Of a stretch of DNA of 64,000 nucleotides, positions 19,941 to 57,363 are shown piece by piece (the first letter of the stretch is position 1; every line of letters starts with the position of its first letter). Source of the DNA: Ramazzottius varieornatus (taxonomy: Eukaryota > Animalia > Tardigrada); assembly GCA_001949185.1 (NCBI GenBank), contig BDGG01000005.1, positions 3,139,972 through 3,203,971 on the forward strand. Direction: 5' to 3'. The notes below the pieces were generated by a model. The model was given only the letters and a program-made list of their open reading frames with translations, had not been told where the DNA came from and did no database searches. The translations under genes were made by a program, and so were the position numbers.

Positions 19941-22484
<2,544 letters not shown>

Positions 22485-28898: not shown

Positions 28899-30000
28899 CT
28901 AGGCAGCATTTGAAACCGGATGGATGGGGATGAAAGCACCGTATTTAATTGCTTGCCTATCAGTCACGCACAAAAGGATTCGCGGTAAACGAAAGCGACA
29001 TTCAAGACTAGCTCACCCACGTGTTCCCGGCCGGTCATGTTCCTTCTTTGTGCATGAATTTGGAAACACGAAATCGTGCACTGGACCGCACCGGCGAGGT
29101 GTAGTAAAACAACTGCTCACCAAGAACTTCATCGCGATATGGTTTTTGCACAGTAAAAATGCGACTGGTGCTGTCGTGCGGTACTGCGTGGTCTCCTTAC
29201 AGGAAAACTCGTCAGTCTAGAAGAAGGTTTCTGTTCCTGAAAGCCAGTAAATCTCACAGCAGTCATACAAAAAGAGTGGTGGAGTACTCACATGACACGA
29301 TCGAGACGTCTCACTCTGCAGTCTTTCTAGGCAACGTTATAAAGTCTGGTGTGTAGTCTGTCATGAGCTCAAGTTAAGGGTTCATTCCTTCTGATTAAGA
29401 TTCCGATTGTAAAGAAGTATAACACCGATATAATAGTAAAGCAAAAAACAGGACAACCGCGTTGAGCGGGACGAGCGCGTTAAGCGGTGAACAAAATGCG
29501 AGGAGCTCGCAGAATGAAGAACGAATCGAGAGAGGACTTGGTCATCGATGGCAATGGTCAAGAAAAGCTAACGCGAGCGTTCACATCGAGTGCGTACGAG
29601 GGAAACATGAGAAGGAAACTCAGGGAAGGAGAGGGAAGGAGAGGGAAGTCGCTCCACAGTTAACCGCAAATAAGCTTCGCTTATTTTTTAATACCTCCTG
29701 GTCGAACATAATGAGCACGTTATAACATTGTGCTATTTTTACATGAAGTTCGAGGACACTCTGGTTTCTTGTGGCAGGAGGGGGGGGGGAAGCGGAAAAT
29801 CAGCAGTTTCATCTTTGAGCTGTTGGAAAAAATACTTGCTACTGTTGCATGAAATCGACCTCTGTAGATTTTGTTCAGTAATTTCACGGTGGTGATAAAA
29901 CTGGCTGCAGCATCTATGAACTGATAAGCGACATGGGATAAGAATAATATTGGTAATTTCTGGCACAGCACTGTCAGCACACAAAAGAATCTGGGTATCA
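28899..30000 (-). pseudogene. Pseudogene copy (A) of the ANF_receptor-domain receptor family
   Basis: Exon 1 relic HVAYQFID..LNKIYRGRF; exon 2 with conserved Trp changed to TGA (29313-29311); most of exon 3 deleted and fused to exon 4 (AFLLCKNHIAMKFL); exon 5 IHAQRRNMT with mutated acceptor. Confidence 0.75.
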
Positions 30001-30978
30001 GCGACAATTCAAAGATGGTTGATCTTAACGGAGTTCCCAGTGCCGGACCGTAGAATGCTCTAGAGTGTCAACAGTCCGACAATTGATCGAATTGCCTTCG
30101 TGTTTACGGTAAAGCGAAAGGTCCGGAAGCTCAGAAGTTGCGAATTTCGAATTTCAAGGTTGGTCGGAAACGTTGATGTGACTTCACCCCACTGGTAAGT
30201 GGTCTAGCTTACAGAAAGCACGTTACGGTTACGACGGAAAATCTCCAGACGGCTGCGGGATTATTATACACAGTACTGCCACAAGTACCAGCTTTCTTTG
30301 CTGTCTGGACCGTATTTCGGTGGGTATACCAAGCCGTTAAAGCATCTCCATATCTGACTAGATTAACACACCGGAAGGATTTCCTTTCTTTCTGTTGCCT
30401 GGGATTATTAGAACGCCGGAATTCCGCCATATTTCCGTCCATGATTCATATGAGCGATTTTCTGCCTTAAGCGAAGCGGGATCCGCCCTGATCCCCAGTC
30501 GATGGTCACATGAGGGGCACTGCATACAAGCGCCAGCTGTTTGTCACATGGCTGGCACGACAGCAAGTCTTTGATGACTGCTACACCGAAATAAAGGGGT
30601 GGATAACCGAACAGAAAAATACTGTAAAAATTCGCTGCATCCGCGCAGTACGTACACGTAACGATGCGCTCCCGTAGGGCGCTGAGCAGGCAGTAAAGCC
30701 AGCCAAGGGGATGCACTTCGCGCGTATGATGACGTGATGTGCGGATGCAGCGAATTGTTACAATAACCGAACAGAAAAAAACCAATCTTTTGTATGGCAT
30801 TTCGTTTACATGGCCTAGTATGAGAGCAATATCGTGCCGTTCTCCCAGAATCCCGGCATTTCCCATCGGTTGACGAGCCGTAGGCTTCTGAGGAAAAACG
30901 TCAACCGTTACGATATTCCTTCTTTCACAAAGCTACCGACAAACGAACTGAGTCAAAACGGAGTGTCTTGAATGTCAA

Positions 30979-33900
30979 TTAGACGATCTTCAAGTAGGGA
31001 GAAGCTTGTCCCCTGCTAGAGATAGACTTCCGTTTGTGGAGTGTCAGGAAATCAGTGCTGTCTAGCAACCACCAGCGTGGCCCATCTGCATGCGATCTCC
31101 GCTTAAGCGACCATGTTGCAAGGGTGCTGGCGCTCAAGATCACGCCAATGGCCACGGCTGCGGGAAGTGCCGCCGACAGCAAGTCATCTGTGAATAATGC
31201 CACACATACCCTACACCCCGGTACTCGCCCCACATGACATTAAGAGATCAAGTTGCTACCCCGGTTCACTTTCCGACTGTAGTAACGGCTCGCTCCGCCT
31301 CTTTTATGAACTGTAACTGCATTTTGCTTTCCGGAACTTCCCTTATTTTCGGAAGACAGCGTAAAATTTGGGATCAGCTGTTCCGCTTATGATTAACATT
31401 GCAGCTCATTTTAGCAACAGTCGGACTTTCATCCGGCGGTGGCAACTCAATCTGCGTATTCCTGCGTGAAATACTGGTAGCTCACTGGATCGACACTTGT
31501 CGTTCTCGAAACCGCAGACTGGCTCTGCTAGTGCAGGCTTTCCGTTGTTCCATACAAATCGTCTTCCGAAGGGAAACGTGACGTTACTCGTTCTGTGGAC
31601 GTACCGCAAGATACTCTAATAAGAGAGTAAGGTTTGATCCCCGGGTCGGTCCTACTCAGCTCTACTGCGTTATACTACTGTAATGCTTCTTGAATTTCGC
31701 GCATCTAGGTCACATCACGCTTGCACTGTATGAGTCACCATACCCGTAAAAGTGGCGCATTGTGACGTGAGTGCGTGAGATTCAAGAAGCATTACATTGA
31801 AATACCTCAAATTTCCCCGTGGTGAAGTTGTACTGCTTGACCAGCATGTCAGCCTGCCTTTGTCCGGTCGGCGAAAAGTGGATGTTGCCGGTGGGTAGAA
31901 TGAATGTGCGGTTGAAGAACTTCTGAGCTATGCTGACACCATCCCGTAAGGCCTCAATCGACGCAGAATGATTGCTCGGCGTTACCGTCTCGTTGATAAC
32001 CTATCGATTAAACGATCGCTAAGTTGCTGGCAATTGGCTTGAGTCGCAGGAAGATTTGTTGAAGGTTTTCCCAAGACGTTGGGACTGCGTTTGGCAATGA
32101 GTATTTTGATGCAAATTGATTCCCGAACACTTACCTTTGCAATTAGGGTTACCGTCAGGTATGCCGACACCGCTATGGCAGCCAACTACATAACAACATT
32201 CTCAAGTGCGTGCTGTCCGTAAATCCACCATTTAACCATCCAGCTTAGTTTCATAGCACTTCAATCAATCAACCGGCGGCAATGAGTGCTTTGAACAAGG
32301 AAATAAAGGTCCTTCTCGGCTGGTCGTGTCCGTCACGTGACCAGCTCACGACAAAGCCTAAACGGCCAGGATGTAGCGCAAACTTCACTCCATCAGAGCC
32401 CGAAAAAGAGATCTTGTGCAAAAATTTCGTACACAAAGTTTCCATACGGGTTTCACAACCCAGTTTGCACAATCTTTCACGGGTGTGATACTCTGAATTT
32501 GAATATCCTGCTTCGTACTCGCTCGATCTCTGCAAAATAAGTATCCTGAGATAGTACACAGCTTGTCCGAAAGGACAAGCATCTTTTTCTGGTATGACGT
32601 TCCCGATTGAGCAAGAAAATAAAGTTCAGTTTAACCTATACGAAAATATGGGCTGTGGAGCCCACATGGAAGCCTCTTGTATAAAATTTTTACGCAAAAT
32701 CTCTTTTTCGAGCTCTTGTTTGAGTGATGTTTTCGTTGTATCCTAGCCATTTAGGCTTTGAAGTAAACCGATCACGTGACGGGACACGACCAACCGAAAA
32801 GGACCTTTATTTCCTTGTTCAAAGCACTCATTGCCGCCGGTTGATTGATTGAAGTGCTGACTCGGCGGTCACATGGTCAACTAGCATGAAGGATCTTCTA
32901 ACTGATGGTGTTTAGATCGATGAAATTGGACAACGGGATCAAAAGATACAGGTAGGTATTGCGACGCCATAGGGTGCCCATGACCGTGATGGTACACGTA
33001 CGTGGCGATGCAACGGGTAGGGGGTTGTGCAGGCAGTGAAACCGGACCGGGGCTGTATTTTACGTGTCCGATGCCATGATGCGCGGACGCAGCGAATACA
33101 GTCCACATCTCCCTCGAGATGTGTACACGCGGCTGGCCTAATTGTTGGCATGGACAAAATTTCTGGCCACTGATTTCCGAATCAGCGGCTCCGCCAGCTG
33201 TATTCGCTCGCGGCTGAAACAGAACTGGTTTCACCACAGATTACCGCTTTACCTTCACGAACAAACAAACGTTTGCAGAGATCTTCTCAATCATCGTAGG
33301 TCTGGTTTCCTTGTATATTCTTGGTTATTTTGCTAGGAAAATGCAGCTCTGATGGTAAATCAGCGTTTTAAAATTTGACTTTTCTCGCCAGAAAGGCCTT
33401 CACTTGAGCAATCCACCACCTTATGGAGGCAACCGCGCGAACTGCCTTTTTCAGGCTATCCTCCGTATACTTTCGCTGTCTCTTGCTCCTAAGACCTTCC
33501 GGCATATTCCAGGCTAACCTCCCTCAAGACGGGAAAAGAAGTACGAAATAAGAAACGAAATCTGAAATGACACTGTATTCCACATATTTCACTGAGAAAT
33601 TTTACTTGCTGACGTCACAGGGCTAGTTTCTGCTACGACAAAACAATCTCTGCGTCAAACTGCCGCCAGCCCGTCCGACCAGAGATTTCGTCCAGGCCAA
33701 TAATTAGGCCAGCCGCGTGTACAAAATTTTTCGGTTCCTGGTAAAATTTCACCGCGCAGCATATCTGGCTAGAGGTCAAAACTACGTACTGCAAAACTAC
33801 GTACAGCACTACGTAACACATGCACTACAAAATTCTTCAACTGATGCAATGAAGTAATCAGGTCGCAGTTTTCTGGCCGTGGTGGGGTTGGCTAGCAGTA

Positions 33901-36643
33901 TCGCTAACTTTGAATGATTTACGTGGTTTGAAATCGGAAAAGTTTGTATGCATTTCGAGCGAGTGGACTGTATTTACAGTACCTTGCCGTAACACTTACC
34001 GCTGTGGTCCCGGAAACGTGGCTGGTCTTCGAATCGTCGATTTTATTTCGGATGTTTTGTACGGTTGTGAGTGGCAGCTTCCCCGCAAGATCCTCATTGT
34101 CATAAGTGATGTAAAGTACGACACCGAGCGTTTGATGGGAAAACTGAAAGGACTCATAATTTCAGTCTGGCTGCGAAACTGAGTTTCGAAAGGGTAGAGA
34201 GCTCCATTAGTGCCTATCCGGTACGGGGCCAGAAGGTTCAGTCAATCAAATGCCATACCAGCATCAGCTTCTACCGAGCACAGCAGCAAGGCCAAGCTGC
34301 TGACTTAGTTCCGCAGATTTGTGATTGGTTCGCAAGCGTAAGGTATGTGTGCAAGTCTTCTACTATTTCTTGTAGCGTGACGAATCCCCGTTTTATAACA
34401 GGGCACGACAAGCACTGACATACTTCTCTTGCACACGATCAGTTACGAGCATTGGTGAGTGAGCCGGCGCTTTCTGCATTGCTTCAGTGAAGGATTGCAT
34501 TCTTGTTCGATCTTTCGATATTACCGTACTGTGCACCGGGGGAACTTGTACTCAATAAGCACTGATTAGTGATTACCTCATTGCTGCTTTCCAACCATGA
34601 CAAATCAGGAAAGCTGGGCAGCATTGTGTACGGTTGGGCAAACAGGTAGACCTGAAGGAGACAAAGGTTAGGTCACAGTGCATTATTAAGCGGGGCTTAT
34701 GGACTTTGGTTATGTCGAGCCTCCGATTAATGTTCACTAAGGGCTTACAAATACCAAGCTGGCTTGGTGGTTATAATTACACCAGCTACTTTGGTGGATA
34801 CGCGCAGAAAAATTTTTGACCAGTTAGGAAAGCGCTGTAACGGCTCGATTTGAAAGCCCCGTACTGCAGTTAAGTACTATTGGAGGATTGTGAGATCTTT
34901 GACGTCGGAGGAATCAATATACACTTACGAGTAGGACGAGTAGCAAGAAACTTCATTATGGAAGTGACATTTTAAATTTTGGAGGGGAGCACAGCGCACT
35001 TGGGATGTTGGTTAAGTCTGGTGTAATCATGAGTCGTGCCGGAGCGACTCGTAATTAGACTGAAAGTGTAACGTCTGGCGGAATGAATAGGCCAATCGTA
35101 AGGGTGTAGGTGGAGCCAATTACACCAGCGTTGTAATTCCACCAGCGGTTTAATCTGTCTTTGTAAGCCCTTACTGATTAATGGATCTCTAGGCGGAAAA
35201 CTTCATACGGGCGCAATCTGACAAAACATGGGAGTGCAGTCCGCTCGTTCGAAATCGGAACCCGATCTACCAATGTCAGTTGTGGTCCAGCTATACGTTC
35301 ATCACACAACATGCCAAGTCAAAGTCTATATTCATATCAAACATACCGTCTCCATGGGATGGCAAGAATTACCATTGACTTTACATGATTATCCTGCTCT
35401 CAGAATGAAAAAATAACAGCTGATTCCGAACGACCGGACTGCGTCAGCAGAATCAAAAGCGATCAAAATCACAATTAGCAGCCGTATTATGCGAACTTCC
35501 TCAGTGGCAGATACTCACGTATTCGTTTTTTGTCATGTTTTTCGCCTGAGCAATAATCTGAAGACGCGTAGAAAATATGAAAGTTAATGCACGATATGTT
35601 AAGCAATATGAAGAACTGGAACCATCTACCAAGAAGTTCCTCGCAATTTCACTCCGGCAAAGTAGGAAAATGACTGAAATGTTTACAAAACGACTGAAAT
35701 ATGTACTGATACTCACATTCTTGGATTTTCCCTTTGGGCAGATCTTAGCTTCTTATTGTACCTCGAGCCGCTTTGCGAACAGAGTTTAGGTGGCTGCTGT
35801 AGTCCACCGAATCCATCCCACTGTCGAAGTTTATAAAGCGGACTTTGAAGATTGGAGCTGCCAGCTGCTGCTTGAAATTTTCACAGTTCGCTCGAAAATA
35901 CCCAACATCGCGCTTGTCGTCGCATAAGAGGAAGACTGTGGTCCATTTATAATACAACAGGAACTTCTTCAGAAAGGCCGCGAAAACGGCATTGTGCGTC
36001 GGTGCCGCGCTAATGGCGGTAGGGTATTTAGTGCTTTCGGTCGAAAAAGTTCCCAGTCTGAAGCCAGCAAATTCAAACTAGGGCCTCCGGGCTTTTGTGA
36101 AAGGTGAATGGCTGGTAGGAATATCGTAACAAACACGCATTGCTTACATTGAGAACACCGGAACGTTCCACTCCGCTGTTATTCGGGCGAGCATGAGAAA
36201 ATCCGGTGCGCAGTCTAGAAAAATTCGCTAAGTTTCAGATGTCGAACTGGTCTGCACTGTAAAGAACAGCACGAACACAGAAACCTACATGGAGAAAGAA
36301 ATACAGATGTTCCCGGGCAGCGTGGTCTCCGGTAGTAAAAAGACGCGGCGATGTCGGCGGTTTCGTCCGCAAGTTGCTCACAGAAGAATTTACTCTTTGT
36401 GGTAAAAGGTACAGCAATGAGACTAAATCTCCCGTCATACAGGAAATTCATCTCCTCAACAGCAACATCAACACTCGATATGACGTCCACAAACTGATAA
36501 GCGACATGAATCAGAACCGTAACTTCGGGAGTTTTACAGACGCCAGTTTTGTTTTGGTTACTCTCAACTCGATTTCCTCCTTCCAGAGCCTCTAAGATGT
36601 TGAAGGTCAACATTAATCCAAAGATCAGCAATACGGAATTCAT
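30979..36643 (-). CDS. Cyclase-less natriuretic-peptide-receptor/rGC-like single-pass receptor, copy B (11 exons)
   Basis: Signal peptide; FCEQLAD, CAPDFLMLARITAEWNVP, WTTVFLLCDD, NMTKNEY|VYL, FNRTFILPTG, EPVCGFENDKC; TM; short tail RWWLL then stop. All 11 exons found with consistent phases. Confidence 0.85.
31679..31796. repeat. Intronic palindromic element
   Basis: TGTAATGCTTCTTGAAT ... ATTCAAGAAGCATTACA. Confidence 0.6.
32255..32858. mobile_element. Foldback/MITE element with ~200-bp inverted arms in intron 7 of copy B
   Basis: AGCACTTCAATCAATCAACCGGCGGCAATGAGTGCTTTGAACAAGGAAATAAAGGTCC is perfectly inverted at the right end. Confidence 0.85.
34741..35170. mobile_element. PIF/Harbinger-like MITE in intron 5 of copy B
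   Basis: TAA|GGGCTTACAAA ... TTTGTAAGCCC|TTA. Confidence 0.6.
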
Positions 36644-41218: not shown

Positions 41219-41448
41219 TAGAGGTGCATAACAGTTGCATGGATCTTTCAGTCGAGTGCTGTCTCGCCTTTCCTACTGTTTAAGGGACACTCACTAGAAG
41301 TAACTGGTAATGCGAAGAAGAGGGCTGAAAATGCTGCGCCATTTGTTGCAGTTTGTGTGGCGTGGGCGTGGGCGTGTACGGTTTTTAAGAGACGGCAGTA
41401 CAGTTGCTCGCATCAGAACAAAATAACTATAGCAAAATTATGATCTCA

Positions 41449-44400
41449 TCAAAGTGATACGCGAGACCGCTGTGCAATTGTTGCACAAGCGACGTTGTCA
41501 ACCCGTTTGTTTCGATGTTTTGATAGAGTGGTTTCCAGGTGCCACCAGAGTTCCATTGACTGCTTTTGTCGTAGTTGCCATTTGACAAAGGCACCGCCGC
41601 TGGTGACCAGCAAGATAAGAACGATGATCACGGGTGCCGTTACGAACATTGGTACTGACTGAACTCCTGGAGCGGAAAAATATAAAGCAATGAAGCGAAA
41701 AACAAAACATCCATTACACCCAGTGCGAACCATGATAATTCACCGTTGTTAATTACGTTACTGTACCTTGACATTTATCGTTATCGAACCCACATAAGGG
41801 TTCGCGCAGCGGTATCTCTCCACCACTCCACATGAATTTCCTGTTGAACGGATACGTCACCGCATTCGTCGAGTACTCGTAACGAACGACACTCTGAAAA
41901 GATGACACTCGTTATCGGTGACCCTATTGCAACATGAAGAATTGTGCGATATGCGTACGGTATGTAGAGCGGTGTAATGAACCCTAACCTCAAACTTTCC
42001 GCTTGTTGTACTCATCTGCTTCATCACAATGTTGAGGTACTTTTGACCGCCCGGACTGATGTACACTTTGCCCATGGGCAGGGAGAAAGTCCGATTCAAG
42101 AATTTCTCCGCTAGTTTTTTACCGTCTTGCAACTGTGGTGTGGATGCAAAGCAGCTGATGGGGTCGATTGTCTCGTTCAGAACCTAACCGAATAAAAGCG
42201 ATTTCGAATGATCCTGATGTGAACTTGGAACCGATGAGCGAACCTCGGCGAGTAAAGTCACCCCCGTGTATGCCGTTAAGGTTGGGGCAGCCAGCTGAAA
42301 CACGGACAGTAACCAAGAGCATTCCAAAATGCGAGTTAGCGGATCAATTGTAGTACGTGATTTTACCCCGGACATGGTTTCCAAACTGGATATCTCGTTA
42401 GCCTCGCTTTGACTGATCCGAGTCCGGATATTTCGAACGGTTTCAGCAGGGAGGTGCTCGGCTTCTCCTTCGTTGTCGTAGGTGAGGTAGAGAACTGAGC
42501 GGGAAGATGTGCTCGATACCTGAAAGGAGGCAGTGTGAAGTGAATTCGTGTGAGTCAAGGAAACTGCATTTCGGTACAAACTGAAATAGGACGAAGCTTT
42601 CCACGTACCTCAGAACTGTTTTCGAGCCATGTAAGGTCGGGGTAGCTGGGAAGCATTAAATAAGGCTGACTAAAGAGGTACACCTATCAGAGAAGAGGGA
42701 GCCGTAGATACACTACATATGTGGAAGCTAACAATGGAACCATAGCAGAAATGTTTGTTCGGGTACACGCGCCTGCCACAACTGTGGGCATGGACAACTC
42801 TGTGGGCAGCGGAGCGAAAGCGGCGCTGGTTTAAGTGCTTTGATTGATTGGTCAACTTCAGCTGGCCCTTGCCGCCTCCGCTCTTTTGCCTACAGTTTTT
42901 TCAATGCTCACAGTTGGGGCATGCGCGTGTCCGAATAATCGTACCGTAGAATCGGACTTACGTATTCGCTGGAGGTCATGTTTTTTGCTTGAGCATGAAT
43001 CTGAAAATAACAGTGCGGACACGTATACGTTCACGTTCTTCGTAGTACAGTATGTCTTTCTCCTTACCAGGATCTTCCGGGCTATTTCGCTTCGACATGC
43101 CAGAAACACAACTGCAAGAAAACAACAGCGTGCTTAGATTGTGACAAATTCGCCTTCCAGAGCAGTATCACATACTTCGAGCAGACTTTTGTACAATGTT
43201 GAGAATGCTGTCGTAGTCTATCACGTGTTTTCCCGCGCTGTCGAAAGCTACCGATCGCTGCTGAAATGCCGGTGTTACTAAAACGCGTTTCAGGCTTTCA
43301 CAGACGGCTCGAAAATATCCAAGGTCCCGTCTGTCGTCGCATACAACGAATATCGTAGTCCAGTTACTGTAGACAAGGAAGTCCTTGACGAAAGCCACGA
43401 AAAGATTGTGGTGCGCTGGAGCGACTGACAATGCGGTCGGATTTTTCCTGTTATCTTTGTCGTCCGGCACGCTTCCCAGTCTAGGAAGCCTCAGGTGTTA
43501 GTTATCATGATGGTAAAAGTGTTGCAGCACAGATGCTCGTTGGTACTTACGTTGATATCACTGGAATATTCCATTCTGATGTTAATTTTGCCACCATCAG
43601 AAATTCCGCAGAGCAAACTGAATAACATACGGGCTTAAGCTACACGAGTGGTACCCGACAGAGAAGCGGAAACACCTAGTAGGGCTGTATTATAAAACGA
43701 GAAAAGGGATTTCGAAAAAGATCAGCCAACTGGGAGGATCGAACTCCCGACATCTTGCTTACTAGGCAAGCGCATCTACCGCTGAGCTAAGTCGGCAATT
43801 ATACTGGAGGAGTTCTGTTTCTCTGTGAGGTTGCGACGTGTGATCGAGGCATGGACGGAGGTGACTGTGTTCGCGCGAACCTTTTCGTGTACAGTATTTA
43901 TCAGCGGTTGGAAATGATAAGTCGTAGTATCAAGCAGGTACGGTGCTCTCGCGCTGCGACGTTCGGAAGCTCAGACACTCACTTAAAAATACTTCGAGTT
44001 CAACAACAGGGCGACCGGCGAGAATTTCATTTCCGAGTGCCGGTTCAGTCTCTCCAGACCTCTTGCGTTGTTGTTCAAGTTCGTAACGCAGACAGCACAG
44101 TAGCTTACTTCATTCTAAACGGATGGCACGAGCCTTCATATTTGATGAGGACCAGCTTCGCTCTCGCTGTGCCGTTTATACCCTGGTCTCGAGTTATTCA
44201 TTCCTTGGCAAAATCCTTGCCTGGATCCATAAGTGCTTTTCATGAAGAACGAAACGTGACTGACATTTCGTATCATAAGGTATGGATGTGTATTACAAAG
44301 GCTGGAGACGTCAAGTGTGCGTAATAATCACTCAATTCTGAACAGGAACAAGAATAGGTACTTACATGGAGAAATGATGACCATGGTCCCCTCAGCACCC

Positions 44401-44714
44401 TGGTTCTCGTAGTAATTCTGAGCAGCAATGTTGACTGTGTCGTCCGCCATCTGTTCACAATAGATGATTTTCTTGTTGGTATATCCTTGATGTTTGAGAT
44501 GGAACTTTCCGCCATACATGGCGTGGGCATCTTGGATCGCAACAGGGATACTGGCGAACACATCGACATACTGGTAGGCCGCGATCGTTACTATCGTTAT
44601 CTGGGGTACGGAGCAGTTGTGGATTCCATCGGACATCTCCATTGCCGTTTGTCCTCTGGATCTCTGACACAGGAAAAACAGAGAAAAGAGCAGCACCGCG
44701 GTTATCCGAGTCAT
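41449..44714 (-). CDS. Cyclase-less natriuretic-peptide-receptor/rGC-like single-pass receptor, copy C (11 exons)
   Basis: Signal peptide MTRITAVLLFSLFFLC; YCEQMAD; EFLMVAKLTSEWNIP; WTTIFVVCDD; EPLCGFDNDKC; TM; tail LWWHL then stop. Confidence 0.87.
42764..42931. mobile_element. Palindromic MITE (TACACGCGCC termini), copy 1, intronic
   Basis: Same family as 58448-58615 (shared GGAGCGAAAGCG and GCTTTGATTGATT..GGTCAAC..CAGCTGGCCC core). Confidence 0.65.
43724..43796 (-). tRNA. tRNA-Thr(AGT) in intron 1 of receptor copy C
   Basis: GCCGACT/AGTTGGC acceptor stem; TAGCTCAGCGG A-box; CTTGC-CTAGTAA-GCAAG anticodon arm; GGGAG-TTCGATC-CTCCC T-arm; downstream T-run terminator; D-stem slightly imperfect. 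Confidence 0.85.
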
Positions 44715-46694
44715 TTTAGTGTGGGAGTAATAGTAAATAAAAATAGCGGGGCACAACATCGGTGGTAACTCATTAAGGATCCTTTCCCACTCGACACATG
44801 ATTACGAAATCCAAGAGATCGATGTAACCATGTAATGTTTCGTCACGTAAGTGAAGTAAGCAAAGATAGTTCACGCATCTTTCTCGTGACGTCGTATTAG
44901 ATGGATGTGAAGCGTCCCAGATCTCTCTAATCGTAAAAAAAAGTAACTTGAACCCTCGAAGAGCATGCCTCGAATGATATTGGTAGAAAATGATCTTTGT
45001 ATACTAGCAGCTGTCAATCAGAGCAGATCAAGCGGCAAATGCAATTGAATATGAAATGCAAGGTTCACCCGCGATTGATCCAACACCACATGCACAACTT
45101 TCATCCAACTCGTTAATTAATATTTGTTCCACTAAATGAATTTGTTCTGCTAACATTTCCTAGTCAAACCCAACTCAGACTTGCTCGGGTGGTTGTGGTG
45201 GCTGAAAACGCACTTCAGTTCACCCTTTTGAAACATACTTTGGTGGCGTTCAGCTCCCTGTATGATGAGGACCTTCGTCCCGTGTACGTTCTCTCGACCG
45301 AAGACTTGCTCTGGAAGAACTGCCAACAGTTTTATGGGCGGAGACAGTGGAGACAGCAGTATTCGGAGCGAAGATATGAGCCGCAGCTTGTTTCCGGCTG
45401 CTTAGCTTGCTTAAGAGGGTGAAACGTTTCGTGCATCACGAGCTGTCACCAGTGCGCGCTACACCTGACTTCCGTTCGTGGTGCATGTCGCGAAGTGTAT
45501 CCACTGTTTAATGGAAAGTTTACAGCTTACGACTCGCGCGCCATGCACCACGAGCATTCATCTCAGTGCTTTGTCAACTTGGTCTCTGCAAATGGCTCCG
45601 CCCACAGTATTCAGGCTGGTCTACTGCCGTTTCGTTCCTGCGGCTGACGAGTTCGGCCGTCCCGTTAATTAATAACCGACTATCCCTGATGTACCGCTCA
45701 GTGGAGCTTTGAGCACCGCATTTGAGAGCTGCTCCATCTTCCCAACAACTTCCTTGCTGCTGTCCAGAGACCTGTCTACTAGTCCAGTATCACCTCTGCA
45801 TGTACCAGCTGCGGACCGAAAGTGGGAAATGCGGACTTCACGTGGAAACGTTACGATCACGCAACGAGTGGATGTTGTTACTTACTAAATCGGCTTCTGC
45901 ATTCTGCAAAGATCGTGGGAGAAACGGCTGAAATTTTGTACTGTATTACCTCAAAATCCACATACGTCACTCGCCACGTTCTAACAAAGATGCGGATGGT
46001 AAGCATGCGATAGGTTGCTTGGCCCAAACAGCCATGACGTTAGTGTAGCCAATTAAGAAAAGTAAATCAACCATTTACAGCTGTGCGGCGAGTTTGGTTC
46101 GGGGAATCAGCTGTTCAGTCAAAGGCTTCTCTCTGTAAATGGATTATAGCACTTCCGGCGGAAGTTCTCGTGGTTAACCCTAGTTCTCAATACACCGCAG
46201 CCTGTCAGTTGTGCAAGGCCTAGTTAGGTGACCGGGAAAAGCTTGAACACATTGACGCCCTTTTATTTTCCGCATGATGAAGCACCGCCAAGTAGAGAAG
46301 AAAACGTCTTGATGCCGTAATACAGAGATGCCGGCTTTGAGTTGTTCAGTTTAGACATGCAGCAACCGTAGAGCGCCTTCTCTGCTGGTAGATTAGTTTG
46401 ATAGTGATGTCGGCGACAATTTTTCTGTTTTACAGTACTTAGGTGAAGCCAACAAATGATACAAACGCTAGATCCCATTGGCCATCTACCGTCCCTAATA
46501 AGTTCAGCAGTCGGCTCTTGTTATATTGTGACGTCTGCAGCAGCAGCACCACCACTAGACAATACAGACTGATTAATGAGTGCAAATAATCATCGAGACA
46601 GAGCATGTTGTTTATAACCAAGCTAAGGCCATGTACCGATGAACGCATACACTATCATGGTTTGGATCGGAGAAAACAAACGTTAGACAAGACA

Positions 46695-49600
46695 TCAAAA
46701 GGTACGACCAAAGCGCATATGCAATGTATTGACCGAGGGTATCAATTTAGAAGTTACCAGTGAACGTCCTTTTTTCGACTCGTAAAGCACGTCTGGCTGT
46801 ACTGCCCACCACATATGTCCAAGTGAGTACACTCTGCGATGGATCCACCATCCCAACCAAACAGCTGTTCCAATAACAGGGACGAGAGCAAGACAAACGA
46901 CCGACCCCAGAACGGAAGCAGGCAATGCTTGAGAGCCTACGGAAAGGAATTTCCGTTGTGCTGTTCAAATGGCTGTTGTGCCGTACGTGTACACATCCAA
47001 CGGCTATGCAGAACCCACCTGCGATGCACTTTCCACCGTCGAACCCACAGATCGGCTCATTTACAGGCATACTTCCACTGTTCCATGAGAAGTTTCTTCC
47101 GAAGGGAAAGCTCACGGTATTCTTTCGATAATTGTACCGAAGAATGTCCTGAAAGAAGCAAATTGCCGGAATTGCTGCAGGGGAAAATGAAAGACCGACT
47201 GATTTTAAGGCGGTCGAGCAGACCTCCAGGTCTCCGGTTTGCCAGTTAACTTGTTGAACAAGCATGTCGACGTGTCTTTGACCCCCAGGAGATACGTAAA
47301 TGCTGCCTGTAGGAAGTGTGAATGTACGACTGAGAAACTTCTCAACTATCCCAACACCATTCCGTAATGCCAGAAGGGAGGAAGTATAATTTGTTGAATC
47401 CACAGTCTCGTTGATGACCTTCAAACAACACAGGCAAACCGAATGCATCCTTGACACAGGGGAAACTTGCCATGTCAATGGCTTACAGTAACCTGAATTC
47501 ACAGCCCTAGGGGAAAAACCGAGTCCAACCTTTCCAAGTAGGGTCACGACAGTATATGCTGCCACCGTTGTTGCTGCTATCTACGGAAATGAAAATTACA
47601 CCCATTTAACCGGTTTTCATGTTTTTTCACATGGCGACAGATATATGCTGACTTTATCCGAAGTGGACAAATTGGCATATCCGGCATTGGCAATTTTTTG
47701 ACGCAGGTTCTTCACGGTCACAAGTGGTAACCGGTCGACGTCTTCGTTGTCGTAGGTTACGCACAAAATTAGACGCAATGTTGCGGGTGTAATCTGACAA
47801 GAATACTCAGCACCAGTAATATAAAGTCCGCCAACACATTCCTACCTCCGAAATGTGACACCTCAGAGAATTCTTCGCGACTCAGCCAGACTCCCGACTG
47901 ACAATCTGAACACACTACTCGATAGTTCATGCGAAATTGATACTACCATGACCACTAGCCTGGTGTTGTGACTGGAATAGAAATAAACGATGGAAAAGTT
48001 GTCACACCTGGGAGGTAGGACTGTATAAATTAACAACAGACTTCACCAATACGGCCCGGACTGGAACGGATGAGTGGCCAGTTGTTGTTGTTGTTTACTT
48101 GTTTTGAGTCTCAATCTATCCAGACGACTGTCTGACAGCGATTGCGACTATGCTACCTGGTAAACTCTCGGCAGACCATCAATACAAAGCCTGAGGAGAA
48201 GAAAGTTTCCACGTACCTCGCTGTCCTGGATTATCCACGACAATTCAGGGTAGCTGGGTAACAACGTGAAAGGCGTACTAACTAGGTAGACCTGTGAAAA
48301 ACCATATTCATCCACTGGCTCAGGTGAGCGGGGGGGGGGGTTACATCTACATTCACATAAGCGTGCTCTGTACCCACATATTCGCTGTTCGTCATATTCT
48401 TCCTCTGAGCATGGATCTGTTAATAAGCACAACAACATATTGTCGGTCCTCTTTTCTTGTGGTATAGCAGCTTTGCAGCCCACTGTATCCTTAGAATTGG
48501 GAAGTACCATGAACTGTCTTGCCACATCGCTTCGGCACATCAGGAACACCACTGGAAAAAAACAACCAAGAAACAGATTTGTATCTACCAACGTTCGAAA
48601 GCTGGCCCAGTATATTTCGACCTGGTGACTCAAGACCCTTCAGGATCAGTACCTCGAGCTGACTTTTGCACAAATTCAAGATAGACATCGTAGCTGACTG
48701 CTTCGGCGCCACTATCAAAGTTGATAGCCGGTATTTGGAACGTCGGCGCTACCAGTAGACGTTTGAAATTTTCACAGTTCGCCCTGAAGAATCCCACATT
48801 TCGCTTGTCATCACACAGCAGAAAAAGTGTGGTCCACTTCTGATACAAGAGGAACTGCTTTAAGAAGTTGCCGAAAACAGTATTGTGGGCTGGGGCAATC
48901 GTTAGTGCTGTCAGATACTTTCGGTCGTCCGTAGCAAAACTACCTATGCTGTAAGGGAGAGTAGTTTGGGTACCGTATCATTCTGGCAATACTTTCGGAA
49001 CAGTTTGGAAACTTACGTGGAGATAACTGGTACGTTCCATTCTGCGGTCAGTCGAGCCATCATTGTAAAATCCGCCGTACAATCTGAAACGGGTGATATG
49101 AGTCTGTTCCGGATATACCGACACGGTCACGGGTCATCGTACGACTATGGTTTTCGTTTGCTTGCCTGTATGCCCTGTACCCATCGTCCGATATTGATAG
49201 TTTGAACACCATCATGGGAAGCACACTTTTTAGTTTCCGGTCACGTGACCATCAAGTCACTGGTACAATCAGTCAGTTGGTGAGCAATTAGTTCCGGACG
49301 AGGAGATACAGGTTCCTTGCTGTCGATCTCTCGTCGCGTGACAGGTTTATGGGGAAGTCCGAACAGCTAAAATTTACTGTCCGAAGCATTACTGTACCGA
49401 CCACCACAAACGAAATCTCTTTGAGAGATTTTGCGCAAAGTTTTTCCTTATGGCTTCTATACGACCTATTTTGCCTCTTTTTTCCGGACGAAATGCTTCC
49501 ACTTACGGTATCTGAGTTTGCGCAAACGAAAACCATGGTCGTACGATGACTCGTAACCGTGAACGTATGCTACAGGTTACTGGAAGCTGTGTTCACTCAC

Positions 49601-49961
49601 ATGGTGACAAAAATATAGGACCACCCGATGGTTCCGTGCGGCGTATATCATAGTAGTATGCAGCAGAAAGGTTTATCGTATCGTCCGCGAGCTCTTCGCA
49701 AAAGAACCTGGTCTGGTTGGAGTATGAAACGGACTTCATTGAGAATCTTCCGGTGTAAAGGGAGTTGACGTCCTCCACCGCCGCTGCTATGCTGGGAATG
49801 ACTTCCGAATACTGGTACGCAGCTGTCGTGACGAGGGTCAGGGTAGGAACTGGGCTTACCGTTGTCGAAGCCTCCATTACAGATGCACTAGAAACCTCGA
49901 GAAGTTTACGGGAAGAAAGGCCGAACAACACAACGACTGCAAACATATCGTAGAGTCGCAT
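46695..49961 (-). CDS. Cyclase-less natriuretic-peptide-receptor/rGC-like single-pass receptor, copy D (11 exons)
   Basis: [59 protein letters not shown], tail MWWAV then stop. Confidence 0.87.
49122..49561. mobile_element. MITE in intron 1 of copy D
   Basis: ~40-bp TIRs CACGGTCACGGGTCATCGTACGACTATGGTTTTCGTTTGC. Confidence 0.75.
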
Positions 49962-50609: not shown

Positions 50610-52898
50610 CGAGGGGATTACGCCTGTCCCCACCTCTTTTTGGTCAAACTGTCCTGGCGGAACGAGAGAGGAGAGTCTCTTCTAGGATCTGAGCCAGTGA
50701 GCTAAATCTCGCGTCGATCCTGGAACAAACTACAGGGACTCGGAAGTGACGTCAGAAATTTATGCAATAACGTAGAAACGTGATGTCTTGTAGGTCCACG
50801 TTAGACCTAACAAACAAACCCTGAAACCCATCAGTAAACAAACGTGTTACGGCAAATAGATAGTACAGAAATGATGAGCGCCATAAAAGTGATGGAAGCA
50901 AAGACGGGCCTTGCACCACCCGCAAACCAGACGAACAATGTCTCTGCAGTTCTCGTGAAGACAACTGCCTTTCAGTTTATCAAACATAAACTTGGCTGGA
51001 TTAACATACATGAAACGTTCGTCGGTATATCCCGACTTATGCCAAACTTCAGCTATCAAATTTTCGAACCTGGGCGACTGAAACTGTTGATACAGCAAAG
51101 AGTGCAATCTCAAAATCGCATCGCGATGATGCACTTGAACGGGTAAATCGTGCAAAAAGACAAAGTCGAATATCTTCTTGAAGCAGCCTTTGTACATCCT
51201 AAAGCATAACACATCTAGCGGTTGAATTTGACCGGTAACTTTCGGAGGGATGGTCAGCATTTCGTACTCCAGCTCTTCCGGTTTCAGTTCAATCACAGAA
51301 TCTTGATCGGTGAAGGTCTTCCACGAGTCGGCCAAGAGAATGCACCGCTCTTCCATATGAGGGGAAAGAACTTTTCTGAACACTCTAAGTAGAGCTTCTT
51401 GGTCATCTTCCCGGATGTCGAAGCAGTGACATACAGATTGTCAGCCTTGAACATCGTTCTCGACACGATTGGACCAAACACTCCTTTCTCTTCCTTCAGC
51501 GTTAGGAAAAGAACAGGAAGAAACTTACGCCTGCCCGGGAAGACCGCCATCATCACAGTGTAGCTATGTGTCATGGAATTCTCCGACTGGGTGATCGCTT
51601 CCACGTGTTTTACTCCAGCAGTTTCCAAAGTTTGTCCTGGTCTCATCTCATATTCAAAGCCTGACTGATCCGCATTCCATAGACAGTCTAACCCGTACTC
51701 TGCGATCCTTCATCTGACAAGCGCAACGCAGGCTTCAGCACTTTCCTTGACGTGAGGCGCTTCTTGTATGGATTTCTTGGTTATTTTCCGGTCAACGATC
51801 CCATAATATCTAGAAAATATTAATTTCGTTTTTGAAGGAAATCGAAGCACAGAATACTGTTGGTACCGTTTGAGATTTCCGATCTAGTCTGGGGAAGCAG
51901 TGAAACCGGCCAAGTTCACCGTTTCGTTCGCAGTGAGAGCCCATCGACGTAAGTCCACTTGCTTTTTCCTTTTAGCGAGGAAGAACTGCTTACCGACATC
52001 CAAACGTAGAGCCTTCAACTTGTCCAGCCTGAAACCGCCTTCCACTACCTGCTTTTCCCAGTCGTACAGCTGCCGTATGCTGGTTACTTTACCAAAACTT
52101 CTCTGAACAGTGGCCAACGTGAGACGCTTCTTCTTCACGGCGTTTCTCCAGTATGTAACCGCACGTTTCTTGTACTCCACGTTGACTAACTGATCCACTG
52201 GAAGCTTGGGGTTAGGAAGTCGTGGGATGTATAGCTCATGGGAAGGTTCAGTTCCGCTGGAAACAGGCTCAAGCAGTCTATCAGGTTCCGTAACGTCGAA
52301 GTCAGCTTCACTCCGGCCATTCAGCAGGTTGCACTGGACAACAGATGCTTCGTAATCTTCAAATGACTNNNNNNNNNNNNNNNNNNNNNNNNNNNNNNNN
52401 NNNNNNNNNNNNNNNNNNAGATTACGAATCAATTAGTATCTTTTTTGTTTTTGAGCTCCAGTGCACAGCAAGATTACCTTCAACTATGTCCTTGAACTGC
52501 CTGTCAGCTTCGCTTGGAAAGTCGTCGATACGGTAGTGCAGTTTGTAGTCCCATTCCAGCAGCTTGATAACATTCAGCAAGTTGATGGATTCCATTTCAG
52601 AGAAGCGCAGGAATGAATGAGCAAACGAGAGAAGGTTGAAAAACAACAGAAAACTTGATGAGCAGGAAGCACAGGCTCAATCAACAACCGAATCAACCAT
52701 CGAACAATCGAGTCTTGATTGTTCATTACTCTGCTTATATACCGCCCTACTTTTGACGTCACTCCCGAGTCCCTGTAGTTTGTTCCAGGATCGACGCGGG
52801 ATTTAGCTCACTGGCTCAGATCCTAGAAGAGACTCTCCTCTCTCGTTCCGCCAGGACAGTTTGACCAAAAAGAGGTGGGGACAGGCATAATCTCCTCG
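50610..52898 (-). mobile_element. pogo/DDE_1-like DNA transposon with ~145-bp TIRs and a frameshifted transposase
   Basis: Near-perfect long TIRs; transposase motifs WNADQSGFEYE, LLADSW, IPPKVTGQIQPLDV, C-terminal CGWC..LCFHHF zinc finger; CENP-B-like HTH region. Confidence 0.9.
52369..52418. other. Assembly gap (50 N) inside the transposon
   Basis: Run of N. Confidence 0.99.
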
Positions 52899-54402: not shown

Positions 54403-57363
54403 TTACAAAATCGAAGTTGTGCGTCTGTTCTCCGATTCAACAAGCATTCGTGAATGCAGCCACCACCACCACGGATCTCCACTTGCGCGAGCCCTCCGGT
54501 TCAGCCACCAGATAAACCACGTGGATCCTCCGGTGGTCAAAAAAAGTCCCAAACAGGTAGCGGGCGCCACAACTGAAACCGATAGAACTTGGTGACCTAC
54601 GGTGAACACGAAGTTACTGCAATGAAAGTCAACGTAGAAACGTACAATATACAAGTACATACCTGCGATACAATTTTCGCCCTCGTAACCGCAAGGAGGC
54701 TCGCTCAGAGGCACGTGCCCGTTGCTCCAGGAAAAATTTCGTCCAAATGGAAAACTCGCATTGTTAGTCCGGTGTGTATATCGAAGCACATTCTACAACA
54801 GGTACTTTGAGCTACCGTTCCGTTGGGACTGTTTAATCAGTAAAGCGTCAGTTGATCGACGATCCGCTAATGCCATCTTGTGTCCCAACTGACCGGTCGT
54901 TGAAAATACCACCTAGATTTTTCCAGTCATGGATTACAGTTTAGATTTCGAAACCCACCTCGAATTTACCGGTTGTTGAGTCGAGCTGCTTGACAAGCAT
55001 GTCAAGATGTTTCTGTCCCCCAGGAGAAATATAGACGGCGCCCGTGGGAAGGTCGAATGTGCGATTGAGAATCCTTTGAACCATGCCGGCGCCGTCGCGC
55101 AGCAAGGTGTACGAGGAAGAAGAGTTTTCCGGGTTTATAGTTTCGTTTATCACCTACGCGTATGGGAGTTGCTAGGTCGATCGCTCAGATTGAAAACAAG
55201 GGGTCACCCCGGTTCACCTTTCCTAGTAAGTTTATTGCTGTGTAAGCGGATACAGTCGATGCGGCCAACTGAAAAAGGTAACCACACTTGATTCATTTCA
55301 TTGAAACGTCAGGCAGATGTGAAATGTCTTACTTTGTCGGAGGCGGAGAAGTTGGGGTACCCGGATTTCCCGATTTTCTCACGCATTTTCCGTAAAGTTT
55401 GACGCGGTAACTTGTCGCCGTCATTCCCATTGTCAAAGGTGATGTACAAGATCAGTCGGGCAGTTTTGGTAGTCACCTAGGTTAAGACAGCGCAGCGATA
55501 GGCTACTTGATCATTTGATCGGTAGCGCGACTGAGCATACATTAGCTATCAGTTCTCACCTCGCTGTCGCCGGTTATCCATTTCATCTGAGGATAGCTGG
55601 GAAGCATAATGAACGGCATGGCCACGAGATAGACCTGCGGAAAACACCCAGACAGAAATGTCAGTCTTCGACGGGATTTAACCGCCTCGTCATCTGATAG
55701 AAGAATATTGAAGTACTCACGTAGTCGCTGTTAGTCATGCTTTTCTTTTGAGCATGGATCTGTCAGACAAAAACTCAATGAAGTTTATTTTAAAGACTTT
55801 GTAATTGTCACTAAGGTCTTAATTGTCTGTCGAAAAGCGCCTGGTCCTGTGTTGCAAGAATTTGAGTACCATGAACTGCCTCGACAGCGCGCTTCCGCAC
55901 AACAGGAAGACGACTGAAAAGAGGACCAGAGGCAATAAGCGTTGATGCCGTGACCTCAGCTTCTCTCCCACAATTAGCAAGATCGTTGGAATCTTTTGAA
56001 TACCTCGAGCCGACTTTTGAACGAAGTCGAGATAGCCGTCATAATTTACTGGTCCCACTCCACTATCAAAGTTGATGGCAAGCACGCGAAAAACTGGTGG
56101 AGCTAGCTGACGTTTGAAATTGTCGCAATTTGCTCTGAAGAATCCCGCATCTCGCTTGTCGTCGCAAAGCAGGAAGATTGTTGTCCATTCATAATAGAGC
56201 AAAAACCGTTTCATAAAACTGGAGAGCACGGTGTTGTGGACTGGAGCCACCAGTAACGCGGACGGGTACCTTCTCTCGTCGGTCGGAAACCCACCTAGAC
56301 TAGACCAGAATGTAAGAGCAAGCTTATACTCTTTGCACTACAGAAGAGTGAACACACCATCGAGTGCTTACGTTGAAACCGCTGGAACATTCCATTCTGT
56401 GGACAGACGCGCCATCATCAAAAAATCCACCGCGCAAACTGTAAATCGCACGATGAGCCAAACAGTCTAAGAACCATGGGGTGGAACCTGTCCGAAGTGG
56501 TCGTATTTCCAAATTTTCGAACGTTCGTTTGATTAAATCGGTCTGGAGTTTTTCGTTTTGGTTCGACAAAACACTAGTCCCATTGTCTAGGAAAGTTTGG
56601 ACAAGCAAAAGTCTGACATCCGCCGCTATCGCGTTACTTCGCTAGGATTTTCTCCTTAGCCAGTGAGATGTCCAGTTCGTCTCCAAATAATTTGATAATT
56701 TTTGCAGAACTCATTTCGGTCGGTGCGGTATGTCTTCCGCACCGAGCAGTCAGTGTAGTCAGTTTTCAGAAATTTCGAAAAATACTGTAGGTGATCTGTT
56801 GAACCTGGCCGCGCCTCTCAGATCTGGCCAGTTAAAACAGGGGGACAAGTTTAGACCCCATAGTACCATAATGTAAACGGAACACCTGGTGCCCAGAGTA
56901 TTAATGACCACTGCAGAACGCCGGTACTGTGGTATGGGATTCTTATGAGGGCGCTAGTGTACTCACAAGGTGCAACAAAGATAGGTAAACCCTTTGAGAG
57001 CGCTGAGCGTTCAATAGCGTAGTAGTAACTGGCGGCAAGATTTATCGTTTCGTCTGCCAACTGCTCGCAAGAGACTACGCTTTTGTTGGTGAACGAAACA
57101 GTCTTCATCGAAAATCTGCCGGCGTAAAGTGAGTTCACGTCATCGACAGCCGTCTCGATGCCGGGAATTACTTCCGAATACTGGTACGCCGCTATCGTAA
57201 CAATGGTCAAGATAGGAGCTGTACTGTTCGAGTGGGGGTGGACATTAGTCAAGGTCGCCGGAACATTCCTCAGATGTTGTTGAGTGGTGCAAACAATCAG
57301 GCCATAAGAAAATGTCAAGAGAAGCATTCGCGTCATTATGTTGCGGATGAGGGTACGAGTCAT
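54403..57363 (-). CDS. Cyclase-less natriuretic-peptide-receptor/rGC-like single-pass receptor, copy E (11 exons)
   Basis: [72 protein letters not shown], tail PWWWWL then stop. Confidence 0.88.
56472..56867. mobile_element. Degenerate MITE in intron 1 of copy E
   Basis: ACCATGGGGTGGAACCTGTCC vs GGACAAGTTTAGACCCCATAGT imperfect inverted termini. Confidence 0.45.

What the first reader, a model, noticed from the sequence alone, without database searches (positions are those of the whole stretch)
28899..57363. Tandem array of cyclase-less Venus-flytrap (ANF_receptor) single-pass receptors
Seen in sequence: four intact paralogues (B-E) and one pseudogene, all on the minus strand with the same 11-exon structure. 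Each has a signal peptide, an ectodomain with receptor-guanylyl-cyclase hallmarks (PxC...ARLxxEWNVP, WTTxxxxCDD, MTxxEYVY, NRTFxLPTG, juxtamembrane EPxCG[FY]xxxxC), one TM helix and only a ~30-50 aa tail. Established knowledge: receptor guanylyl cyclases continue into kinase-homology and cyclase domains, and vertebrate NPR-C is the known short-tailed form. Inference: this is a lineage-specific, diversifying family of NPR-C-like receptors derived by truncation of an rGC. They could act as decoy/clearance receptors, as heterodimeric ligand-specificity subunits for full-length rGCs, or as environmental (osmotic/chemical) sensors. Best candidate for an undescribed system in this window.
Basis: partly seen in the sequence, partly recalled or inferred. 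Interest (0 to 1): 0.85.

Follow-up and report, generated by a model that had tools for sequence, protein, structure and literature searches.

The report
Cyclase-less natriuretic-receptor-like genes in a tardigrade
Four neighbouring genes of the tardigrade Ramazzottius varieornatus encode cell-surface receptors that look like hormone-sensing guanylyl cyclases cut off just inside the membrane; two are shown spliced in RNA-like contigs, and they belong to a large, undescribed tardigrade family of unknown function.

Summary
There are four intact minus-strand paralogues: E 57363-54403, D 49961-46695, C 44759-41449, B 36643-30979. Each has 11 exons with identical intron phases and encodes 534-555 aa: a signal peptide, an ectodomain of about 440 aa, one transmembrane helix and a tail of about 40-50 aa. 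The fifth copy (A, 29974-28796) is only a relic with three exon-like pieces.

A 1796-nt spliced contig confirms all 10 introns of C. It carries the in-frame stop and 80 nt beyond it. The last two introns of D are also confirmed.

The window holds no kinase-homology or cyclase exon. The assembly gap lies in a young multi-copy transposon between E and D, not in a receptor gene.

A profile of the tardigrade family matches solved NPR-A (E 1e-41) and NPR-C (5e-36) ectodomains far better than GABA-B or mGluR. The match runs through the membrane into NPR-A's juxtamembrane 'ELWRVRWEDV'. The tail is therefore the stump of a receptor guanylyl cyclase.

The family is much larger than this array. I tested 22 cyclase-less loci in this genome, and Hypsibius also has a same-scaffold set of five. 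The scan noted the family before on other DNA of this genome (s1-790066).

Synonymous sites are saturated and dN is low, which points to purifying rather than diversifying selection. Function is untested; a non-catalytic ligand sink or partner of full-length cyclases is my best guess.

The parts
54403..57363 (-). Gene E: 11 exons, 535 aa (543 aa with the alternative exon-11 acceptor at 54596). Signal peptide, NPR-type ectodomain, one TM helix, tail of about 40 aa.
   Evidence: Splice model. Same intron phases as C and D. 55% identical to D. No RNA was laid on it.
46695..49961 (-). Gene D (RvY_10982): 11 exons, 546 aa.
   Evidence: Model. Database protein P0001/GAV00083.1 is 97.7% identical over residues 1-263. 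P0034 scores 61.6 bits on PF01094. Intron 10 is confirmed by a joint, intron 9 by a loose end, and the contig ends about 65 nt after the stop.
41369..44807 (-). Gene C, full mRNA as seen in contig X1. CDS 44759-41449 (555 aa; 540 aa from the ATG at 44714).
   Evidence: All 10 joints match the model. The contig length of 1796 nt equals the summed exons. A second study (X3) shows five of the joints.
30979..36643 (-). Gene B (RvY_10977): 11 exons, 534 aa. Intron 7 is 1814 nt and intron 5 is 867 nt.
   Evidence: Model. P0039 (RvY_10977, 244 aa) is 100% identical to residues 1-239 and scores 43.3 bits on PF01094.
28796..29974 (-). Relic A: exon-1-like (29974-29744), exon-4-like (29180-29118) and exon-5-like (29065-29018) pieces. 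Exons 2-3 and 7-11 were not found.
   Evidence: tblastn of the four models against the window and frames.
54403..54572 (-). Exon 11 of E: TM helix, basic stop-transfer residues, the W-rich juxtamembrane motif, and the stop.
46695..46936 (-). Exon 11 of D: TM helix, tail and stop.
41449..41666 (-). Exon 11 of C: TM helix, tail and stop. The transcript continues unspliced past the stop.
30979..31187 (-). Exon 11 of B: TM helix, tail and stop.
50850..52818 (-). Tc5/pogo-like DDE transposon between E and D. It holds the assembly gap 52369-52418 and is not part of the receptor genes.
   Evidence: Pfam DDE_1 and Transp_Tc5_C. About 30 copies at 95-100% identity, with flanks 94 bp apart in intact copies.

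Best explanation
Genes B-E are a Ramazzottius-specific tandem expansion within a family of type I membrane receptors shared at least with Hypsibius. The family arose from receptor guanylyl cyclases (rGCs) by loss of everything after the juxtamembrane segment.

Each protein keeps four things: the two-lobed ligand-binding ectodomain of the NPR/rGC type, the membrane-proximal Cys-x6-Cys motif (P-x-C-G-[FY]-x4-C), one TM helix, and a cytoplasmic stump of about 40-50 aa. The only conserved feature of that stump is the 'W-W-x-[LIV]...L' motif. In full-length cyclases this motif leads into the kinase-homology domain.

The proteins cannot make cGMP. The most likely mode of action is inferred, not shown. 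They would bind the same kind of extracellular ligands as the much-expanded tardigrade rGCs. They would then act as non-catalytic partners, either as ligand sinks, as NPR-C does in vertebrates, or as subunits that pair with full-length rGCs and set or damp their response.

I hold the structural and evolutionary part at about 0.9 and the mechanism at about 0.4.
For: Shown:
- Four intact 11-exon genes.
- A full spliced transcript of C with an in-frame stop in exon 11 and 80 nt or more of contiguous 3' sequence, plus the 3' part of D.
- No PF00211 hit in C5:3139972-3203971; the nearest is 80 kb away on the other strand.
- No kinase or cyclase hit in the window with a spider rGC or with this genome's own rGC. 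The same queries find those exons in the control locus L019.
- PF01094 above cut-off for the proteins of D and B.
- Family profile against solved structures: NPR-A 1.3e-41 over the whole ectodomain, NPR-C 4.7e-36, next family 1e-12.
- AlphaFold model of family member P0041 (pLDDT 80; 31% identical to E over its full length). Foldseek top hits are NPR-A (TM 0.73-0.75), then NPR-C.
- The profile aligns through the TM into NPR-A 'ELWRVRWEDV'. The W motif is present in 12 of 13 full-length family members (11 by the automatic count, gene B by eye), in the spider rGC and, in degenerate form, in L019.
- dS is saturated while ectodomain dN is 0.25-0.44, and seven cysteines are conserved.
- Family breadth: of 45 exon-3-type hits in the genome, only one has a same-strand cyclase within 5 kb. 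Short annotated proteins exist in R. varieornatus, H. exemplaris and P. metropolitanus.

Background: guanylate cyclases are expanded in this genome with their role 'elusive' (PMC5034306). Eclosion hormone and an rGC receptor exist in tardigrades (PMC6660194).
Against: - No ligand, partner or expression pattern is known.
- Contigs cannot fix true 3' ends.
- The tail has no resemblance to the Gi-activating tail of NPR-C.
- The homodimer test gave no verdict.
- Only one full-length tardigrade rGC ectodomain was in the tree, so one truncation event cannot be told from several.
- dN/dS is unreliable at this divergence.
Confidence: 0.55

Rival explanations
1. The proteins are autonomous receptors. 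The short tail, through its conserved W-W motif, recruits a cytoplasmic effector and signals without cGMP. This would parallel the G-protein coupling reported for the vertebrate NPR-C tail.
For: The tail motif is conserved in 12 of 13 family members across two tardigrade families. That argues the stump does something beyond anchoring.
Against: The motif is simply the one that rGCs already have before their kinase-homology domain, so it may be kept for pairing or folding. The rest of the tail is the least conserved part of the protein, at 23% identity among B-E. No known signalling motif was found.
Confidence: 0.2
2. The proteins are chemosensory or environmental sensor subunits expressed in sensory neurons. 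This would parallel the many rGCs of nematode sensory neurons, with the cyclase supplied by a partner.
For: The family is large, arranged in tandem and expanded within lineages, a pattern typical of sensory receptor families. Another first-stage note reports family members interspersed with gustatory-receptor genes (s1-790066, unchecked).
Against: My scan for 7tm_7 found only 12 hits, none next to the family loci I listed. There are no expression data. Purifying selection on the whole ectodomain does not point to fast-changing ligand pockets.
Confidence: 0.15
3. The genes are decaying, functionless leftovers of cyclase genes.
For: One copy (A) is indeed a relic. Official gene models are truncated.
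Against: Four copies keep full open frames, all splice sites, seven cysteines and the tail motif although synonymous sites are saturated. C and D are spliced and transcribed. Relatives in Hypsibius have the same architecture, and Paramacrobiotus has short-tailed relatives outside the clade.
Confidence: 0.05
4. They are full-length cyclase genes whose 3' exons lie elsewhere, through misassembly or very long introns.
For: There is an assembly gap in the region.
Against: The gap is inside a transposon between two genes. Each gene is followed within 1.9-4.7 kb by the next copy or by unrelated genes. The mRNA of C carries its own stop and 3' sequence. No kinase or cyclase exon lies in the 64 kb.
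Confidence: 0.03

Closest known systems
Vertebrate NPR-C (NPR3, natriuretic peptide clearance receptor)
   Same: NPR-type ectodomain, one TM helix, a cytoplasmic tail of a few dozen residues, and no kinase-homology or cyclase domain. The solved NPR-C ectodomain matches the family profile at 4.7e-36 and the model at TM 0.70-0.72.
   Different: - The family matches NPR-A better and over more of its length than NPR-C.
- The tail keeps the rGC juxtamembrane W motif. From my memory of its sequence, the NPR-C tail lacks this motif.
- It is a family of dozens of genes rather than one.
- Natriuretic peptides are not known from tardigrades.
- It is most likely an independent truncation.
Receptor guanylyl cyclases (NPR-A/GC-A; invertebrate rGCs such as the eclosion hormone receptor and nematode GCYs)
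   Same: The ectodomain fold, the membrane-proximal Cys-x6-Cys motif (P-x-C-G-F-x4-C), a single TM helix and the juxtamembrane W-x-[IV] motif.
   Different: There is no kinase-homology domain, no coiled-coil linker and no cyclase domain, so no cGMP synthesis is possible.
Database entries for the same family: R. varieornatus RvY_10982 and RvY_10977 ('hypothetical protein'); H. exemplaris BV898_20132, BV898_00640/00641, 'putative gcy-28'; P. metropolitanus 'atrial natriuretic peptide receptor 3-like'
   Same: These are the genes themselves (D and B) or their relatives.
   Different: The R. varieornatus models stop after exon 3-4 (244-316 aa) and miss the TM helix and tail. The names are automatic. 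I found no paper that mentions these loci or the cyclase-less family.

Membership tests
Pfam ANF_receptor (PF01094), type I periplasmic-binding-protein fold | Score above the curated cut-off of 25.4 bits | tested here: met
   P0034 (gene D, partial) scores 61.6 bits and P0039 (gene B, partial) 43.3 bits. Single exons alone stay below the cut-off: exon 3 of E scores 16.9 bits.
Pfam ANF_receptor (PF01094), type I periplasmic-binding-protein fold | Two-lobed alpha/beta fold | tested here: met
   Tested on a family member, not on a window protein. The P0041 model has pLDDT 80.2. Foldseek gives NPR-A at TM 0.73-0.75 and E 6e-26.
Receptor guanylyl cyclase | NPR/rGC-type ectodomain with the membrane-proximal Cys-x6-Cys motif (C-G-F-x4-C) | tested here: met
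   The profile aligns to NPR-A 12-433, including 'PKCGFDNEDPAC'. The motif is present in B-E.
Receptor guanylyl cyclase | Kinase-homology domain after the TM helix | tested here: not met
   The proteins end 40-50 aa after the TM helix. There is no tblastn or tblastx hit in the window, while the control locus L019 is hit.
Receptor guanylyl cyclase | Class III cyclase catalytic domain (PF00211) | tested here: not met
   Of 158 hits in the genome (150 of them listed), none lies in the window. The nearest is C5:3058838-3059603 on the other strand.
NPR-C / NPR3 | Ectodomain, one TM helix and a short tail without enzyme domains | tested here: met
NPR-C / NPR3 | Orthology with vertebrate NPR3 | tested here: inconclusive
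   NPR-A scores better than NPR-C, and the tail aligns with NPR-A. No tree with vertebrate NPRs was built.
NPR-C / NPR3 | Binds natriuretic peptides and clears them; the tail couples to Gi | not testable with these tools
   This needs binding and signalling assays.

The most novel reading that the evidence does not exclude
Tardigrades run a two-part receptor system. Dozens of cyclase-less NPR-like subunits would pair through their ectodomains and retained juxtamembrane motif with the expanded full-length guanylyl cyclases. This would give combinatorial ligand specificity or gain control over cGMP signalling. It would resemble obligate heterodimers among other receptors of this fold, but is undescribed for guanylyl cyclases.
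Probability: 0.2. Interest if true: 0.75.

Novelty: new variant of a known kind. Interest (0 to 1): 0.5.

Why it matters
Short-tailed NPR-type receptors are known as a single vertebrate gene, NPR-C. Here the same solution seems to have arisen separately and then multiplied to at least 22 loci tested, and perhaps about 40, in one small genome. This sits beside an expansion of guanylate cyclases that the genome paper called elusive.

If these proteins modulate cGMP signalling, they are a missing half of that expansion. They could bear on hormone, moulting, osmotic or sensory control in an animal studied for its stress tolerance.

There is a practical result too. The public gene models for these loci are truncated and can now be corrected.

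Tried and rejected
- **Pfam on single exons.** It gave only a sub-threshold ANF_receptor hit.
- **Joined spliced proteins.** They were used only in local scripts. Database proteins of the same genes or family stood in for them.
- **The search for homologous proteins.** It was limited by shared words and query length, and returned 3, 2 and 5 hits.
- **First structure model.** The P0005 model was poor (pLDDT 48.8), so I give its fold search little weight.
- **Complex prediction.** The homodimer test of the P0041 ectodomain gave no verdict. It is evidence neither for nor against dimerisation.
- **YN00 dN/dS.** It failed on saturated data. NG86 gave dS of 1.9 or more, or undefined.
- **Polyadenylation signal.** No canonical hexamer lies within 400 nt of any of the four stops.
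- **Gustatory-receptor co-clustering.** The clustering suggested by another note was not seen with PF08395.
- **tblastx with the kinase and cyclase exons of L019.** It hit only short repeats in the window, at 6925-7140, 22988-23164 and 24429-24603.
Full report
**Source and context.** The window is contig C5:3139972-3203971 of a 55.8-Mb, 200-contig genome. Database proteins that match the window's genes name the organism as Ramazzottius varieornatus. GAV00083.1 (RvY_10982-2) is 97.7% identical to gene D over residues 1-263. RvY_10977 is 100% identical to gene B over residues 1-239.

**The assembly gap.** The gap 52369-52418 lies between genes E and D, inside an element with Pfam DDE_1 and Transp_Tc5_C matches. 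About 30 copies of this element at 95-100% identity are spread over the genome. In intact copies the two flanks of the gap are 94 bp apart. The gap therefore hides about 94 bp of a young transposon. It does not bear on any receptor exon; the nearest are at 54403 and 49961.

**The observation.**
- Translated minus-strand segments of four regions match each other exon by exon, with E-values down to 1e-49.
- I defined splice sites from conserved GT..AG pairs and reading frames and built four 11-exon models of 534-555 aa. Coordinates are in the observation check.
- Exon lengths are nearly identical. The intron phases are the same in all four (1,2,1,0,0,0,0,0,0,1), seven cysteines are shared, and each ectodomain has 6-8 N-glycosylation sequons.
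- Each protein has an N-terminal signal-like hydrophobic stretch, a single C-terminal hydrophobic helix and about 40-50 residues after it.
- For E the exon-11 acceptor is ambiguous (54572 or 54596).
- Copy A is only a relic with exon-1-, exon-4- and exon-5-like pieces.

**Transcripts.** Contigs of four public runs of the same organism were laid on 41200-47200.
- One contig of run X1 is 1796 nt long. That is exactly the sum of my exons of gene C from 44807 to 41369.
- It shows all ten predicted joints, all with CT..AC ends on the + strand, which is GT..AG on the minus strand.
- It carries the stop at 41451-41449 and 80 nt beyond it.
- Run X3, from another study, repeats five of the joints. It continues unspliced from exon 11 to at least 41200.
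- For gene D, intron 10 is seen as a joint and intron 9 as a loose end that reads into exon 9. The contig stops about 65 nt after the stop codon.
- No joint leaves exon 10 or 11 for anything further downstream.
- The runs are only guessed to be RNA, but spliced contigs are themselves evidence of processed transcripts. Contigs cannot fix true ends.
- E and B were not covered, because only one read-laying run of 6 kb was allowed.

**Absence of the enzyme half.**
- A six-frame search of the whole genome with PF00211 gave 158 exon hits, of which 150 are listed and fall into about 78 loci. None is in the window. The nearest is 80 kb away on the other strand.
- A spider receptor guanylyl cyclase (P0038) gave no hit at all in the window at E of 1 or less.
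- The kinase and cyclase exons of this genome's own rGC at locus L019 hit only short repeats in the window.
- The same queries find the kinase-homology and cyclase exons in L019, 3.7 kb downstream of its ectodomain exon. This serves as the positive control.
- The genes next to the array are unrelated. They are an inorganic pyrophosphatase, a GT2 glycosyltransferase, an amino-acid-transporter-like ORF and transposase fragments.

**What the ectodomain is.**
- Single exons are too short for Pfam.
- The database proteins of genes D and B pass the ANF_receptor cut-off, at 61.6 and 43.3 bits against 25.4. So do all full-length relatives.
- A profile of ten tardigrade family members matches the solved NPR-A ectodomain at 1.3e-41 over profile positions 22-443. 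It matches NPR-C at 4.7e-36. GABA-B receptors follow at 1e-12 and mGluRs at 1e-7.
- A model of Hypsibius protein P0041 was built with a 59-row alignment that included the window's exons. P0041 is 31% identical to E from residue 37 to 528. The model reached pLDDT 80.2.
- In a fold search, that model finds NPR-A (TM 0.73-0.75) and then NPR-C (0.70-0.72), ahead of GABA-B.

**The tail.** Against full-length human NPR-A the profile alignment runs on through the transmembrane helix. It reaches residue 494, pairing the family's 'RR...D-R-W-W-x-L...L' with NPR-A 'YRK...ELWRVRWEDV'.
- The same motif follows the membrane in the spider rGC ('HWWKIEWSDLEF'). It appears in degenerate form in the tardigrade rGC of L019.
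- It is present in 12 of 13 full-length family members, including B-E. The automatic count was 11, and gene B was added by eye.
- The rest of the tail is the least conserved part of the proteins, at 23% identity among B-E.
- The tail is therefore the stump of an rGC, cut just where the kinase-homology domain would begin. The inference that the family arose by truncation rests on this.

**Size and age of the family.**
- A profile of exon 3 finds only 32 proteins among 1.84 billion cluster representatives. Those I looked up are all tardigrade.
- In the genome itself the profile finds 45 exon hits. Only one has a same-strand cyclase hit within 5 kb downstream.
- I fetched 19 of these loci. Only L019 has kinase or cyclase exons within about 8 kb.
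- Annotated proteins with a TM helix and 28-55-residue tails exist in R. varieornatus (RvY_16919), H. exemplaris and P. metropolitanus. H. exemplaris has five PF01094-only paralogues on one scaffold, including the adjacent BV898_00640 and BV898_00641. One of the P. metropolitanus proteins is automatically named 'atrial natriuretic peptide receptor 3-like'.
- In a maximum-likelihood tree of 31 rows, B-E form a clade with 100/100 support. Within it (E,D) is starred at 97/88 and (C,B) has 93/88 support. No Hypsibius sequence is nested inside.
- A clade of 25 cyclase-less sequences from Ramazzottius and Hypsibius has 95/92 support. The one true rGC in the tree (L019) lies outside it.
- Caveats: many rows were stitched from tblastn pieces, only one tardigrade rGC was included, and the root is a single long spider branch.
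- The scan had already noted 'cyclase-less natriuretic-receptor-like ectodomain proteins' on another piece of this genome (s1-790066). My census agrees with that note.

**Selection.** Pairwise identities among B-E are 42-55%. Synonymous sites are saturated, with NG86 dS of 1.9 or more, or undefined. Ectodomain dN is 0.25-0.44, giving nominal ratios near 0.12. Proper site tests need closer orthologues.

**How it probably works.**
- Shown: a secreted-pathway, glycosylated, single-pass protein with an NPR-type ligand-binding domain, no catalytic domain, and a retained juxtamembrane motif.
- Inferred from what is established for NPR-A and NPR-C: the ectodomains act as dimers and bind ligand between two subunits.
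- My preferred reading is a non-catalytic partner of the cGMP system. It would be either a ligand sink or a subunit that pairs with full-length rGCs (confidence about 0.4).
- Autonomous signalling through the tail, or a role as sensory receptor subunits, are live rivals. Decay and misassembly are nearly excluded.
- The homodimer prediction gave no verdict.

**Literature.** The genome paper mentions an expansion of guanylate cyclases whose role is 'elusive' (PMC5034306). A developmental transcriptome paper notes that many 'atrial natriuretic peptide receptor' genes peak in late eggs of H. exemplaris (PMC6925440). Eclosion hormone and an rGC receptor are reported in tardigrades (PMC6660194). I found no paper on these locus tags or on cyclase-less forms in tardigrades or other invertebrates. 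The library lacks most subscription journals.

**Verdict.** The finding is real and its core reading is right. But it is one tandem array of a much larger family that is visible in databases under automatic names and truncated models. I rate it a new variant of a known kind (NPR-C-like architecture, apparently of independent origin, expanded, with an rGC juxtamembrane stump). It is of moderate interest until a function is shown.

Noticed in passing
window 50850-52818 (gap 52369-52418): A young Tc5/pogo-like DDE transposon lies here. About 30 copies at 95-100% identity are in the genome, several of them 100% identical (C5:3079331-3080225, C144, C169). The 50-N gap stands for about 94 bp in intact copies.
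   Followed up: yes
window 37916-38374 (+): A weak mariner-type Transposase_1 fragment (E 2.5e-4) lies in the 4.7-kb spacer between genes B and C.
   Followed up: partly
window 42549-43773: Run X4 holds a 1264-nt contig that covers this stretch unspliced (introns 1-5 of gene C). It has three T>C differences and is flanked by T/A runs and letters that look like a Gateway att site. It may be a cloned fragment or a vector chimera in that study.
   Followed up: no
window 45520-46350: Contigs of runs X1 and X15 cover this spacer between genes C and D. It holds no ORF above about 85 aa. It could be an unannotated transcript or DNA carry-over.
   Followed up: no
window 42740-42900, 58431-58584, 33107-33169: A short repeated element is shared by intron 5 of gene C, intron 7 of gene B and a site upstream of gene E.
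   Followed up: no
window 18150-19317 (+), 19956-20444 (+), 23297-23689 (-): The left neighbours of the array are an inorganic pyrophosphatase, a family-2 glycosyltransferase and a weak amino-acid-transporter-like ORF. None is related to cyclases.
   Followed up: partly
G000 C5:3097188, C5:3088512, C5:3222051 (outside the window): Further family members lie 43-51 kb to the left of the window and 18 kb to the right. One of them (3088512) has an internal stop. The one at 3097188 groups with a C14 gene, not with B-E.
   Followed up: partly
P0010 (H. exemplaris BV898_14225, 879 aa): This public model fuses a family member (residues 1-600) to a multi-pass segment with a weak 7tm_1 match. It is probably two neighbouring genes merged.
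   Followed up: no
same genome, another piece (note s1-792745): Another first-stage note claims an rGC whose ectodomain has a PstS-like fold. I did not look at it here.
   Followed up: no
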